Part shown: piece by piece, positions 8,408 to 17,092 of the stretch
How the letters are laid out: each line of letters starts with the position of its first letter
Position numbering within the stretch: position 1 is the first letter of the stretch
Origin: Ministeria vibrans ATCC 50519
Taxonomy: Eukaryota > Protista > Filasterea
Assembly (NCBI GenBank): GCA_943704425.1
Contig: CALSCP010001042.1
Coordinates: forward strand, 1 to 38,423
Direction: 5' to 3'
Length of the DNA: 38,423 bases
Made by a program: the position numbers and the translations under genes
The notes under the pieces: generated by a model
The model's input: the letters and a program-made list of their open reading frames with translations, nothing else
What the model was told of the DNA's origin: nothing
The model's database searches: none

Positions 8408-11400
8408 ATGGCGTGGCGTCTTGCCGTCCTCCTTCTCGTTGTGTCATCCGCAACTCCCGCCTTCACCGACGCCGTCTCCTGTACAGCGACCGCTTGCTCG
8501 TGCCCGCCCGGCTGGACCGGCTGGGGCTCAAGCTGCTACCTTCTCATCACGTCGACTCAGGTACACCTCCAATTTCCTTCACTTTTTGGGCGAGAAGAGT
8601 TTTTTTTTCGGGAGTTTGTTTTTTTTTTNNNNNNNNNNNNNNNNNNNNNNNNNNNNNNNNNNNNNNNNNNNNNNNNNNNNNNNNNNNNNNNNNNNNNNNN
8701 NNNNNNNNNNNNNNNNNNNNNNNNNNNNNNNNNNNNNNNNNNNNNNNNNNNNNNNNNNNNNNNNNNNNNNNNNNNNNNNNNNNNNNNNNNNNNNNNNNNN
8801 NNNNNNNNNNNNNNNNNNNNNNNNNNNNNNNNNNNNNNNNNNNNNNNNNNNNNNNNNNNNNNNNNNNNNNNNNNNNNNNNNNNNNNNNNNNNNNNNNNNN
8901 NNNNNNNNNNNNNNNNNNNNNNNNNNNNNNNNNNNNNNNNNNNNNNNNNNNNNNNNNNNNNNNNNNNNNNNNNNNNNNNNNNNNNNNNNNNNNNNNNNNN
9001 NNNNNNNNNNNNNNNNNNNNNNNNNNNNNNNNNNNNNNNNNNNNNNNNNNNNNNNNNNNNNNNNNNNNNNNNNNNNNNNNNNNNNNNNNNNNNNNNNNNN
9101 NNNNNNNNNNNNNNNNNNNNNNNNNNNNNNNNNNNNNNNNNNNNNNNNNNNNNNNNNNNNNNNNNNNNNNNNNNNNNNNNNNNNNNNNNNNNNNNNNNNN
9201 NNNNNNNNNNNNNNNNNNNNNNNNNNNNNNNNNNNNNNNNNNNNNNNNNNNNNNNNNNNNNNNNNNNNNNNNNNNNNNNNNNNNNNNNNNNNNNNNNNNN
9301 NNNNNNNNNNNNNNNNNNNNNNNNNNNNNNATAATAATAATAATAATAATAATAATAATAATAATAATAATAATAATAATAATAATAATAATAATAATAA
9401 TAATAATAATAATAATAATAATAATAATAATAATAATAATACTAATATTAATAATATTAATAATATTAATATTAATATTAATATTAATACAATAATAATA
9501 ATAATATCGTAATCATATAGTACCAGCTATGCTCACCCTAATCCTTGTGCTTCCTGCATAGGCAACCGATCCGGCTCGCTGGGAAATCTACTGGCCAGGA
9601 CACAGCACATGTTACCGCTACGAATGGACCCCACTCGCTGCGTATTTCCAATAATAATACTAACATTGTATGTTCGTTGGTTTGTTAATGTTGTGTGTTT
9701 TTGTTTCTTCCTTTAGAATCAATGCGAATCAAATGTGTGCCCAAAAGTTTGGAGTTTCCGCCAAACTCGCATCTATTGGTTCAAAGGTATCAACAATCTT
9801 AGCGTTTATCATAATAACTAATAATGATAATATTTTTGTTATTAATTTATTATTGTTTATATTATTTTCTTATTTTTGGCTTGCATGGTTGTTAAAATTA
9901 AATTGTATTTTGGAATAGGCTGAGAGCACATTTGTTTACCACACAATCATGACACAATTGCGCGCGAGTATCAACGAGCCGTCTTTCGTGTTCTGGCTGG
10001 GCATGAACGACATAGCATCAGAGGGAACCTTTGTCAATAGTGACGGGTCGGCCATGACATACGGTGGCGGCTGGGCGTGTAACCAGCCCGACAACTTTGG
10101 TGCGGGAGAAGACTGCACCATCATGCTTGATCGTACTGGAAACAGTGAGTGGAACGACGTACCGTGTGGCATGCAGCTGGGTTCACTCTGCGAGCGCACC
10201 TGCCTTGCCATGCCAACCCCGTGTGTTTCGTCGCCATGCCAGAACGGTGCCACTTGTGCCGAGATCGTTGGTGAGCTAGCCTGCCTTTGTGGAGATGGGT
10301 ACACGGGCGCCACCTGTGACACTGCGCTTGGTCCACCGTGTGCCTCGTCGCCCTGTCAGAATGGAGGGGTGTGCTCCGAACGAACAGCAAATACATTTTC
10401 ATGCGCCTGTACCGGTATTTGGGCGGGTGAAACGTGTGACAGCAGCAGCATCGTGTGCGAGTCAAACCCGTGTCAGAACGGCGGAACGTGCACCGCCACA
10501 TTTTTAACGTCCACCACCGAGGCGAAACGCTACACATGCACTTGCCCCTCCGGCTGGACCGGCATTCATTGCGACACCGTTCTTTGTCCCAGCGACTGGC
10601 AGCCTTACGGTGGCTCATGCTACCACTTGTCAACGGGAAACACCCTCACATGGAATGCTGCCGAAGCCTACTGCCAGAGTTCCTTCAGCGGCGCCCATCT
10701 TGTTGTCGTAAGCTCGGCCGCCGAAAATATCTACCTCGCGTCTGTTTCCACAAAGCCTTTCTGGATTGGCCTTCACGACAAGACAAACGAAAATCGCTGG
10801 GAATGGGTTGTGGGCGGTACCATTATGCCCTACGAGAATTTTGCTTGTGGTGAGGTAAGAGTATTGAGAGATGATAAAGTATCAAAATAACAGAATTAAT
10901 AACGATGTTTTTCTATTATTCAGCCGAATGACGCGTCAACCGGCGAAGATTGTGTTCATTTTGGGGCGTCGGGCACGTGGAATGATGCGGACTGTTCGTC
11001 GTTGAGGTATGCCATGTGTGAACGTGCAATGGTGGGCGCTGCGGCCTGTGCCACCAACCCATGCACGAATGGCGGCACTTGCGTGGAAACGGGAGAACTG
11101 TCCTACTGCACGTGTACGCCCGAGTACACGGGGGAACTATGCGAAGGGCGTTTGTGCGGTCCTGAGGAGCTATACTACGCGGGTGCTTGCTACCAGTACG
11201 TGTCTGACACGCCGCGTAGCTTCAACGAGGCCCAGAAAAACTGTCAGGAGCGCGGCGGCAATGTGGCTTCTATCGTCTCCTCGGCCGAAAACGATTTTTT
11301 CACTGCTTCCCTGTACACTCCGGGTCGCTATGCCGCGTCACTTGCGACGAACCGTCCGGCTACCAACTTGTGGTTGGGTTTAAGTTCGTCTGCAAACGGT

Positions 11401-17092: not shown

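What the first reader, a model, noticed from the sequence alone, without database searches (positions are those of the whole stretch)
8408..17092. Giant lectin-EGF receptor tyrosine kinase: candidate glycan-sensing signalling receptor
Seen: one spliced gene giving signal peptide - CTLD1 (mostly in gap) - CTLD2 - 3 EGF - CTLD3 - EGF - CTLD4 - CTLD5 - at least 14 EGF - ZU5-like - 2 EGF - TM - ~470-aa Tyr-rich tail - intact tyrosine kinase (HRDLAARN, DFG, KLPIRW). Known: none of the canonical vertebrate RTK classes has a C-type lectin ectodomain; animal CTLD receptors such as dectin-1 signal through separate Syk/Src kinases; unicellular holozoans have independently diversified RTK ectodomains. 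Inference: a sugar-pattern receptor held on a long EGF stalk and wired directly to phosphotyrosine signalling, for prey, bacterium or self recognition. I do not recognise this architecture, but cannot exclude that it has been catalogued.
Basis: partly seen in the sequence, partly recalled or inferred. Interest (0 to 1): 0.85.

Follow-up and report, generated by a model that had tools for sequence, protein, structure and literature searches.

The report
C-type-lectin/EGF receptor tyrosine kinase gene
A single-celled relative of animals (most likely the filasterean Ministeria vibrans) has one expressed, about 2,670-residue receptor gene that puts six sugar-binding-type lectin domains and about 21 EGF repeats outside the cell and a working-looking tyrosine kinase inside; the reading is real, but it is a new variant of a known theme, not a new kind.

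Summary
This is one ten-exon gene (ATG 8408, TAG 17090-17092, GT-AG introns, consistent phases).

- **Architecture:** signal peptide, 6 C-type lectin domains (CTLDs), about 21 EGF repeats, a ZU5-fold module, a transmembrane helix, a 480-residue Tyr-rich tail and an intact tyrosine kinase.
- **Gap 8629-9330:** it is not empty. An unplaced 1,211-base contig of the same genome (C1110) fits its poly-T and (ATA)n flanks. It carries three in-phase exons: the rest of CTLD1, one EGF and an extra CTLD.
- **8-N gap at 12674-12681:** this is an unmerged contig overlap. An independent contig bridges it, and the merged reading is in frame.
- **RNA support:** RNA-derived contigs show four of the predicted splice junctions. 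One junction carries an unexplained 2-base discrepancy.
- **Prior art:** lectin-ectodomain RTKs are already known (Hydra Sweet Tooth; CLECT is among the RTK domains of ichthyosporeans/Corallochytrium). Ectodomain shuffling is the rule for holozoan RTKs. The nearest paralogues here carry Sushi, REJ or ephrin-receptor-like ectodomains on the same chassis.
- **Likely the published CLEC gene:** the genome's markers fit M. vibrans. A 2026 paper reports that its C-type-lectin-domain protein is up-regulated during aggregation, and this is the only CTLD gene in the genome.
- **Earlier notes:** this scan's earlier notes cover this same stretch only.

The parts
8408..8560 (+). Exon 1: start codon, signal peptide (MAWRLAVLLLVVSSATPAF...) and the first strands of CTLD1 (CPPGWTGWGSSCYLL). 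It ends in phase 0, with a GT donor at 8561.
   Evidence: phase worked out coordinates
8629..9330 (.). Assembly gap 1. It is most likely filled by unplaced contig G000:C1110 (L001, 1,211 bases), which starts with poly-T and ends with (ATA)n, like the two gap flanks. L001 exons are 65-269 (CTLD1 middle), 325-540 (CTLD1 end with EPN/WND, plus the start of an EGF) and 618-1054 (EGF end plus an extra CTLD). That is 858 nt, all in phase with exon 1 and with the exon at 9562.
   Evidence: RNA contig record 18 leaves about 880 nt upstream of 9562.
9562..9641 (+). Exon 5: start of CTLD2.
   Evidence: RNA joint 9641->9717, GT..AG
9717..9786 (+). Exon 6: CTLD2 continued.
   Evidence: RNA joints 9641->9717 and 9786->9919
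9919..10854 (+). Exon 7: rest of CTLD2 (QPD at 10084, WND at 10150), 3 EGF repeats, and the first two-thirds of CTLD3.
10924..11893 (+). Exon 8: end of CTLD3 (the EPN is split by the intron; WND at 10978), 1 EGF, CTLD4 (QPS, no WND) and the first part of CTLD5.
   Evidence: RNA joint near 10854/10924 with a 2-base discrepancy.
11959..16573 (+). Exon 9, one open frame: end of CTLD5 (EPN 11961, WND 12018), 14 EGF repeats, the ZU5-fold module, 2 EGF repeats, the TM helix, the Tyr-rich tail and the kinase N-lobe.
   Evidence: RNA joint 11893->11959 in two runs.
12674..12792 (.). Gap 2 (8 N) plus a 111-base unit that is 100% identical to 12563-12673. This is an unmerged contig overlap, not real sequence. 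Removing these 119 bases restores one frame with no stop.
   Evidence: Contig of run X18 joins 12562->12682 with 111 shared letters.
13841..14347 (+). Extracellular ZU5-fold module with RRR (14243-14251) in a disordered loop. At least 10 paralogous copies occur in this genome, most of them just upstream of tyrosine-kinase domains.
14627..14695 (+). Transmembrane helix (SLVPIIIGVTAGVALLVLVVVLL), followed by the stop-transfer RRRRHRRR.
14696..16135 (+). Cytoplasmic tail of 480 residues with 28 Tyr, including 12 YxN motifs (15320-15727 region).
16130..17002 (+). Tyrosine kinase domain, split by the intron at 16574-16648. It has GSGEFG, AIK, HRDLAARN, DFG and PIRW.
16649..17092 (+). Exon 10: kinase C-lobe, a short C-terminal tail ending in -SSQV, and the stop TAG at 17090-17092. 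An AATAAA lies about 50 bases downstream.

Best explanation
This is one gene for a type I membrane receptor tyrosine kinase of about 2,670 residues in a unicellular holozoan, most likely Ministeria vibrans.

**Shown**
- It is a ten-exon gene that is expressed and spliced.
- Outside the cell it has, in order: CTLD1, EGF, an extra CTLD, CTLD2, 3 EGF, CTLD3, EGF, CTLD4, CTLD5, 14 EGF (11 sites across the EGF repeats of exon 9 carry the Ca-binding D/N-x-D/N-E-C start), a ZU5-fold module and 2 EGF.
- Then come one TM helix, a 480-residue tail with 12 YxN sites, and a kinase with all catalytic motifs.

**Inferred mechanism**
- The three EPN-type (mannose/GlcNAc/fucose class) CTLDs and the one QPD-type (galactose class) CTLD bind multivalent glycans in a Ca2+-dependent way at the tip of a long rigid EGF stalk.
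- Binding to a repetitive glycan surface (another cell, prey bacteria or matrix) clusters receptors.
- The kinases then trans-phosphorylate, and the YxN-rich tail recruits SH2 adaptors.
- The RRR, which is invariant across paralogues and sits in an exposed loop of the ZU5-fold module, is probably cut by a furin/kexin-type convertase. That would give a two-chain receptor held together by the last two strands.

**Origin.** The gene is one product of a lineage-specific RTK radiation. A common chassis (ZU5-fold module, EGF, TM, kinase) has been joined to different ectodomains.
For: **Gene model**
- GT-AG introns and matching phases throughout.
- The introns split CTLD1, CTLD3, CTLD5 and the kinase. 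Pfam profile positions continue across them: Lectin_C 4-71 then 75-106, and PK_Tyr 1-143 then 143-258.
- EGF repeats, TM, tail and kinase N-lobe lie in one 1,308-codon open frame.
- RNA-like contigs carry joints 9641->9717, 9786->9919 and 11893->11959 (the last in two runs), and about 10854->10924. DNA-like contigs of run X4 run through the same places without those joints, including one 2,113-base contig over 10229-12341 with no difference.
- A 2,641-base RNA contig starts at 14446. Its length fits a run through TM, tail and the spliced kinase to about 20 bases past AATAAA.

**Gaps**
- See the parts list.

**Lectin competence**
- Lectin_C scores are above the curated cut-off.
- The nearest solved structures are the mannose-receptor family, mincle, aggrecan and selectins.
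- EPN+WND occurs three times and QPD+WND once.

**Kinase competence**
- The TK-specific HRDLAARN and PIRW motifs are present.
- PDB hits at 1e-27 to 1e-34 are to tyrosine kinases, receptor and cytoplasmic, among the best 60 listed.

**Processing and readers**
- RRR is invariant in 11 paralogous modules that are about 30-34% identical.
- It lies in the only low-confidence loop of a confident model.
- The genome has two P_proprotein-domain loci and at least 23 SH2 matches.

**Chassis**
- The nearest paralogue kinases (45-53% identical C-lobe) carry EGF+Sushi, EGF+Ephrin_rec_like or Sushi+REJ ectodomains.
- The ZU5-fold module recurs upstream of kinase domains on at least seven contigs.
Against: - No single contig or read spans the whole mRNA. 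Contigs break at repeated EGF words.
- The contig that crosses the 10855-10923 intron has two letters fewer than the model (TTTGCTTG+GTG+AG instead of TTTGCTTGTGGTGAG) at depth about 4.7. If real, that transcript would stop right after the first two-thirds of CTLD3. DNA run X4 agrees with the genome there.
- The placement of C1110 in gap 1 rests on simple-repeat flanks, phases, domain continuity and a length budget. There is no unique overlap and no read was laid across it.
- Two CTLDs (the extra one and CTLD4) lack the sugar motifs. Many CTLDs with good motifs bind proteins.
- No sugar binding, cleavage, phosphorylation or ligand has been tested.
- The organism's name is inferred, not given.
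Confidence: 0.62

Rival explanations
1. Same gene and same kinase, but the CTLD/EGF ectodomain is mainly a protein- or matrix-binding adhesion module (homophilic or heterophilic), as in many animal CTLD proteins. The receptor would then report cell-cell or cell-matrix contact rather than a sugar pattern.
For: - Two of the six CTLDs lack the EPN/QPD and WND motifs.
- The long Ca-binding EGF arrays resemble those of Notch and Delta, which bind proteins.
- The probable source paper files its CLEC protein under cell-cell adhesion and finds it up-regulated in aggregation (PMC13366479).
Against: Four CTLDs keep both the sugar-selecting tripeptide and WND, with the Glu/Asn spacing of Ca2+ site 2. Such motifs are usually lost in CTLDs that do not bind sugar (established knowledge of the family).
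Confidence: 0.2
2. The locus gives two products, not one: a secreted lectin/EGF protein that ends near 10850, and a separate EGF-TM-kinase receptor. Alternatively, in the culture sequenced in 2025 the gene is frameshifted.
For: The only RNA-like contig across the 10855-10923 intron has a 2-base deficit that creates TGA directly after ...FAW. No contig spans lectins and kinase together.
Against: - That contig is at low depth (4.7).
- Genomic DNA from two data sets has the in-frame sequence.
- The spliced exon that follows completes CTLD3 exactly, with EPN restored across the junction.
- The RNA joint 11893->11959 links CTLD5 to the exon that holds the kinase, in two runs.
- There is no start codon context, signal peptide or intergenic gap downstream.
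Confidence: 0.08
3. The receptor signals mainly by regulated proteolysis (shedding at the RRR/ZU5-fold module followed by release of the tail, Notch-like). The kinase would have only a secondary role.
For: An invariant RRR sits in an exposed loop next to the membrane, in a fold known for autoprocessing in other proteins. The stalk is EGF-rich and Notch-like.
Against: The kinase has every catalytic motif, and the tail is built as a pTyr docking array. No nuclear-targeting or transcription module was seen in the tail (Pfam).
Confidence: 0.05

Closest known systems
Hydra vulgaris 'Sweet Tooth' receptor tyrosine kinase (Reidling, Miller & Steele 2000, J Biol Chem 275:10323; described in PMC2680970 and PMC3531485)
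   Same: A single-pass receptor tyrosine kinase whose ectodomain is built of several C-type lectin-like domains, so a lectin is wired directly to a tyrosine kinase.
   Different: - Sweet Tooth has four divergent lectin-like (SWT) domains. No EGF stalk or ZU5-fold module is described for it.
- It is from an animal.
- Orthology was not tested here, because no sequence was at hand.
- An independent origin is likely, given that holozoan RTK sets do not overlap (PMC4342544).
Lineage-specific RTK radiations of unicellular holozoans (Monosiga, Capsaspora, Ministeria, ichthyosporeans, Corallochytrium; PMC4342544, PMC3753549)
   Same: - A group A tyrosine kinase joined to shuffled extracellular domains.
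- No orthology to any animal RTK class.
- EGF repeats are common.
- CLECT is listed among the RTK domains of ichthyosporeans/Corallochytrium.
   Different: - This exact combination (6 CTLD + about 21 EGF + ZU5-fold module) was not found in any paper held here. It was also not found among the kinase's best relatives in the databases.
- Capsaspora is reported to lack C-type lectins altogether (PMC3753549).
Mannose-receptor family, selectins and lecticans (animal CTLD proteins)
   Same: They have tandem CTLDs and CTLD-EGF units. They are the closest solved structures and the nearest feature clusters, and they use the EPN/QPD sugar code.
   Different: They have no kinase. They signal, if at all, through separate adaptors. 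They also carry FNII/Cys-rich or Sushi modules that are absent here.
Plant lectin receptor-like kinases, including the single C-type LecRLK (PMC7758398)
   Same: The logic is the same: an extracellular lectin, one TM helix and a cytoplasmic kinase.
   Different: They use a Ser/Thr (RLK/Pelle) kinase and are unrelated in origin. This is convergent design.
ZU5 domains of ankyrin/UNC5 and cleaved juxtamembrane modules (Notch HD, GAIN, SEA)
   Same: The fold matches ZU5. The position next to the membrane and a basic site in an exposed loop recall furin-cut Notch and other two-chain receptors.
   Different: - Known ZU5 domains are cytoplasmic.
- There is no Pfam-level sequence match and no HFS autoprocessing motif.
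- Cleavage is untested.

Membership tests
Receptor tyrosine kinases (group A TK, Pfam PF07714) | Tyrosine-kinase catalytic domain with TK-specific motifs (HRDLAARN, DFG, P-I/V-K/R-W) | tested here: met
   PF07714 positions 1-143 and 143-258 in two exons (E 7.9e-42 and 6.6e-38). The motifs were read. PDB matches among the best 60 are tyrosine kinases.
Receptor tyrosine kinases (group A TK, Pfam PF07714) | Type I topology: signal peptide, ectodomain, one TM helix, cytoplasmic kinase | tested here: met
   Hydrophobic N-terminus in exon 1. There is a single strong hydropathy peak at 14627-14695, followed by a basic stop-transfer.
Receptor tyrosine kinases (group A TK, Pfam PF07714) | Ligand-induced autophosphorylation on tyrosine | not testable with these tools
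   Needs expression and a phosphotyrosine assay.
Any named animal RTK class (EGFR, InsR, Eph, Ret, Met, MuSK, PDGFR ...) | Kinase domain clearly closest to one class, and a class-typical ectodomain | tested here: not met
   MuSK, Ret, Met, Eph, Abl and Syk all score alike (1e-27 to 1e-34). The best database relatives are only 36-55% identical and of mixed kinds. No phylogeny was run.
C-type lectin domain (PF00059), sugar-binding subset | CTLD fold recognised above the curated cut-off | tested here: met
   Lectin_C is above 22.6 bits on six separate domains. PDB relatives are found.
C-type lectin domain (PF00059), sugar-binding subset | Ca2+ site 2 motifs: EPN or QPD, plus WND | tested here: met
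   Met in 4 of 6 domains: CTLD1, CTLD3 and CTLD5 have EPN+WND, and CTLD2 has QPD+WND. The extra CTLD has none, and CTLD4 has QPS without WND.
C-type lectin domain (PF00059), sugar-binding subset | Measured Ca2+-dependent carbohydrate binding | not testable with these tools
   Needs recombinant domains and glycan arrays.
Hydra Sweet Tooth family | Shared descent of the kinase and of the SWT-type lectin-like domains | not tested
Only the architecture is compared, from PMC2680970 and PMC3531485.
ZU5 domain (PF00791) | Sequence match to the Pfam model | tested here: not met
   No hit at E <= 1 for this copy and none for 10 paralogues. One metagenomic kinase relative (P0178) has a weak ZU5 hit at 24.7 bits.
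ZU5 domain (PF00791) | ZU5 beta-sandwich fold | tested here: met
   AF2 with 11 paralogues gives pLDDT 80.8 and pTM 0.77. In Foldseek the top 17 PDB hits are ankyrin and UNC5b ZU5 domains, with best E 3.2e-5, probability 1.00 and TM 0.52-0.64.
ZU5 domain (PF00791) | Cytoplasmic location | tested here: not met
   The module lies between EGF repeats, N-terminal to the TM helix.

The most novel reading that the evidence does not exclude
This is the only C-type-lectin gene of the filasterean Ministeria vibrans, and it is the very 'CLEC' protein reported as induced during its aggregation. Because it is in fact a receptor tyrosine kinase, glycan recognition between cells (or of prey) would be coupled directly to phosphotyrosine signalling in an aggregating relative of animals. 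It would work through a two-chain receptor cut in an extracellular ZU5-fold module, and that module is shared by ten or more RTKs of this lineage.
Probability: 0.3. Interest if true: 0.7.

Novelty: new variant of a known kind. Interest (0 to 1): 0.5.

Why it matters
RTKs and C-type lectins are two of the gene families most often cited for the origin of animal multicellularity. Here they are fused in one expressed gene of a free-living relative of animals, in a group (Filasterea) long thought to lack C-type lectins.

If this gene is the lectin protein induced in aggregation, it gives a concrete and testable candidate for how cell-surface sugars could trigger signalling before animals existed. 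Candidate tests are sugar or EDTA competition, antibody blocking and phosphotyrosine read-outs.

The recurrent extracellular ZU5-fold module with an invariant RRR is a separate lead on how these receptors are processed.

Tried and rejected
- **Wrong frame at first.** My first Pfam call on exon 1 used 8409 and was out of frame. It was repeated from 8408.
- **AF2 without an alignment.** The ZU5-like module folded poorly on its own (pLDDT 44), so that model was not used.
- **Profile of the module against PDB sequences.** Only the trailing EGF was picked up, so this was uninformative.
- **Kinase N-lobe search among proteins of 712-2,264 residues.** No close relative was found and none carried Lectin_C. 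The tool's length limits mean that longer kin could be missed.
- **Exhaustive search with the C-lobe exon.** The best single-domain relatives are only 42-55% identical. The eight looked up are unnamed metagenome, ENA or Logan fragments.
  - Their Pfam content is kinase alone in most cases (one also has SH2), or kinase with EGF, TNFR or a weak ZU5 hit, never Lectin_C.
  - Two of their contigs showed no lectin exons.
- **Lectin exon 8 search among proteins of 178-565 residues.** Nothing at E <= 1e-8.
- **Manning et al. 2008 (PMC2453073).** The paper is not held.
- **Supplements of the two Ministeria aggregation papers.** They are not held, so the identity of their CLEC gene could not be checked.
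- **Contamination by animal DNA.** Rejected: the module and kinase have many paralogues across this genome, and the introns are of the same type.
- The joined (spliced) protein was never sent to any search or fold tool. Every search was done exon by exon by reference. No complex prediction was run.
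Full report
**What is there**

The stretch 8408-17092 on the + strand is a eukaryotic multi-exon gene. The ATG is at 8408 and the stop TAG is at 17090-17092.

I translated each exon by reference and scanned it on its own. The joined protein was never sent to any tool. 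Pfam finds:
- Lectin_C on six separate domains.
- EGF many times.
- PK_Tyr_Ser-Thr profile positions 1-143 at the end of the large exon, and 143-258 in the last exon.

The exons in the window are 8408-8560, 9562-9641, 9717-9786, 9919-10854, 10924-11893, 11959-16573 and 16649-17092. All introns are GT-AG and all phases agree. Several introns cut through domains:
- CTLD3 is split at E|PN.
- CTLD5 is split just before EPN.
- The kinase is split between VVK and VADFG.

The halves on the two sides of each such intron therefore only make sense as one protein.

**The gaps (tested first, as asked)**

*Gap 1 (8629-9330).* A Lectin_C search of the whole genome found matches on only two contigs: this one, and a 1,211-base unplaced contig, C1110.
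- C1110 begins with about 30 T and ends with (ATA)n. The gap's left flank ends in poly-T and its right flank starts with (ATA)n.
- C1110 carries three GT-AG exons, 858 nt in all, that slot in phase between exon 1 and the exon at 9562.
- Exon 1 ends ...CYLLITSTQ in phase 0. The first C1110 exon then continues the same CTLD (Lectin_C profile 4-71) and the second finishes it (profile 75-106, with EPN and WND) and starts an EGF. The third ends that EGF and adds a complete further CTLD.
- One RNA-like contig of 1,371 bases covers 9917-10257 plus the two small exons. About 880 bases of it therefore lie upstream of 9562, which fits 858 nt of C1110 exons plus a little of exon 1.
- So the two sides of the gap are not directly continuous. 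They are joined by exons that the assembler left unplaced. This is a strong inference but not a proof: there is no unique overlap.

*Gap 2 (12674-12681, 8 N).* The 111 bases before it are 100% identical to the 111 bases after it.
- A contig from another study joins 12562 to 12682 with those 111 letters shared.
- Removing the 119 extra positions gives one frame without stops and a normal EGF junction.
- The apparent frame shift is therefore an assembly artefact.
- The two neighbouring 300-base blocks are 290/300 identical, so this is a recent three-EGF duplication.

**Expression and splicing**

Contigs of runs X5 and X15 carry the joints 9641->9717, 9786->9919 and 11893->11959, all GT..AG. Contigs of run X4 run through the same places without those joints, and one 2,113-base contig covers 10229-12341 without a single difference, so X4 behaves as DNA.

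An X5 contig of 2,641 bases starts at 14446. Its length fits a transcript running through the membrane helix, tail and spliced kinase to about 20 bases after an AATAAA.

Contigs break only at repeated EGF words, so no single record spans the whole mRNA.

One thing is unexplained. The contig crossing the 10855-10923 intron has two letters fewer than the model in a TGTG, at depth about 4.7. As read, this would create a stop.

**Anatomy**

From the outside in:
1. Signal peptide.
2. CTLD1 (EPN, WND).
3. One EGF.
4. An extra CTLD without sugar motifs.
5. CTLD2 (QPD, WND).
6. Three EGF.
7. CTLD3 (EPN, WND).
8. One EGF.
9. CTLD4 (QPS, no WND).
10. CTLD5 (EPN, WND).
11. Fourteen EGF. Eleven sites across the EGF repeats of exon 9 have the D/N-x-D/N-E-C start.
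12. A 170-residue module.
13. Two EGF.
14. The transmembrane helix at 14627-14695.
15. The basic stop-transfer RRRRHRRR.
16. A 480-residue tail with 28 tyrosines, twelve of them in YxN.
17. A kinase with GSGEFG, AIK, HRDLAARN, DFG and PIRW, ending in -SSQV.

With the overlap merged, the protein is about 2,670 residues.

The closest solved CTLDs are those of the mannose-receptor family, mincle, aggrecan and selectins. The kinase matches MuSK, Ret, Met, Eph, Abl and Syk about equally, so it belongs to no animal RTK class.

**The ZU5-like module**

Pfam sees nothing in it. The genome nevertheless holds at least ten paralogous copies. Most sit just upstream of tyrosine-kinase domains, on contigs C1494, C1674, C313, C2362, C945, C1961 and C155.

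Their alignment (30-34% identity) has an invariant RRR, two invariant cysteines in the module and a tryptophan, and is followed by an EGF.

With this alignment AlphaFold gives a confident model (pLDDT 80.8). The only disordered loop in it holds the RRR. The top 17 PDB matches are all ZU5 domains of ankyrins and UNC5b, with E from 3.2e-5 and TM 0.52-0.64.

The genome encodes two convertase P-domain loci. Cleavage at RRR is a reasonable inference, but it is untested.

**Family context**

The closest kinase paralogues in the genome (45-53% identical C-lobes) have EGF+Sushi, EGF+ephrin-receptor-like or Sushi+REJ ectodomains. The lectin receptor is thus one product of domain shuffling on a common chassis.

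Outside the genome:
- The best relatives of the kinase are 36-55% identical, and the closest single-domain ones looked up are unnamed metagenomic fragments.
- Some have EGF, or a weak ZU5 hit, ahead of the kinase.
- None shows a lectin domain.
- The lectin exon finds nothing significant among proteins of similar length.

**Which organism**

Names are withheld, so the organism is inferred.
- An HDAC8-type gene in the window is about 40% identical to those of animals and Capsaspora.
- The genome has at least 169 kinase-domain matches, at least 23 SH2 matches, a collagen IV C4 domain, and cadherin domains on about nine contigs.
- The years of the public runs holding this DNA (2011, 2022, and 2025 RNA-like runs; also seawater and algal-culture metagenomes) fit that organism's published history.

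I take the source to be M. vibrans, at about 85-90%. Because only one CTLD gene exists here, this gene is probably that protein. The supplement that would settle it is not held.

**How it most likely works**

*Shown:* the architecture, the splicing and the intact motifs.

*Inferred:*
- The EPN-type and QPD-type CTLDs bind sugars with Ca2+.
- A repetitive glycan surface clusters receptors.
- The kinases phosphorylate each other and the YxN-rich tail.
- SH2 adaptors dock on the phosphorylated tail.
- The ectodomain is cut at RRR, and the two chains stay associated.

The ligand could be another cell of the same species, prey bacteria or matrix. Nothing here decides between them.

**Comparison with what is known, and novelty**

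- A tyrosine-kinase receptor with C-type lectin-like domains has been known since 2000: Hydra Sweet Tooth, with four such domains (PMC2680970, PMC3531485).
- CLECT is among the RTK domains of ichthyosporeans/Corallochytrium (PMC4342544).
- Plants have lectin receptor kinases with an unrelated kinase (PMC7758398).
- Independent radiations of RTK ectodomains are the accepted picture for unicellular holozoans (PMC4342544, PMC3753549).

What is new here:
- The specific build: six CTLDs, a 14-EGF stalk and a ZU5-fold module.
- Its occurrence in a filasterean.
- The resolved gene model across both gaps.
- The recognition that the lineage's single lectin gene is a tyrosine-kinase receptor.

I rate it a new variant of a known kind, with interest 0.5.

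Noticed in passing
window 13841-14347; also G000 contigs C1494:106511-106951, C1674:9924-10373, C2516:738-1184, C2362:40369-40818, C313:179281, C1670:87506, C945:274306, C1961:28049, C155:4293, C1597:289: An extracellular ZU5-fold module recurs in at least 11 loci. It has an invariant RRR in a disordered loop, two invariant Cys, and is always followed by an EGF. Most copies lie just upstream of tyrosine-kinase domains, so this looks like a shared, probably convertase-cut, juxtamembrane unit of this lineage's RTKs.
   Followed up: partly
window 10847-10924: The only RNA-like contig across this intron (run X5, depth about 4.7) lacks two letters (TG of TGTG) just before the donor, which would create a stop. 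DNA contigs agree with the genome. It could be a contig error, an allele or a truncated isoform.
   Followed up: partly
window 12264-12563 and 12722-13021: A recent tandem duplication of a three-EGF block (290 of 300 bases identical). The copy number of stalk EGFs may vary between strains and was hard for the assembler.
   Followed up: partly
G000:C2159:122900-132899 (L017), G000:C1664:67000-75933 (L015), G000:C313:84500-92000 (L016): These paralogous giant RTKs have other ectodomains. One has Sushi repeats plus a REJ domain (3,074-codon open frame). One has EGF plus Sushi (2,684 codons, running off the contig end). One has EGF plus an ephrin-receptor-like domain.
   Followed up: partly
G000:C372:34129-34714 (minus strand): A collagen IV C4 (NC1) domain (E 9.9e-24) is present in this unicellular genome. 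It was used here only as a marker for the organism's identity.
   Followed up: no
window 18297-23177 (-), 23338-26745 (+), 1473-3707 (+): Three long open frames (1,626, 1,135 and 744 codons) have no Pfam match at E <= 1e-4.
   Followed up: no
window 26778-28151 (-): A single-exon HDAC8-type histone deacetylase, about 40% identical to animal and Capsaspora HDAC8.
   Followed up: partly
window 30339-30565: A third assembly gap (227 N) lies inside a long minus-strand open frame (28284-31889).
   Followed up: no
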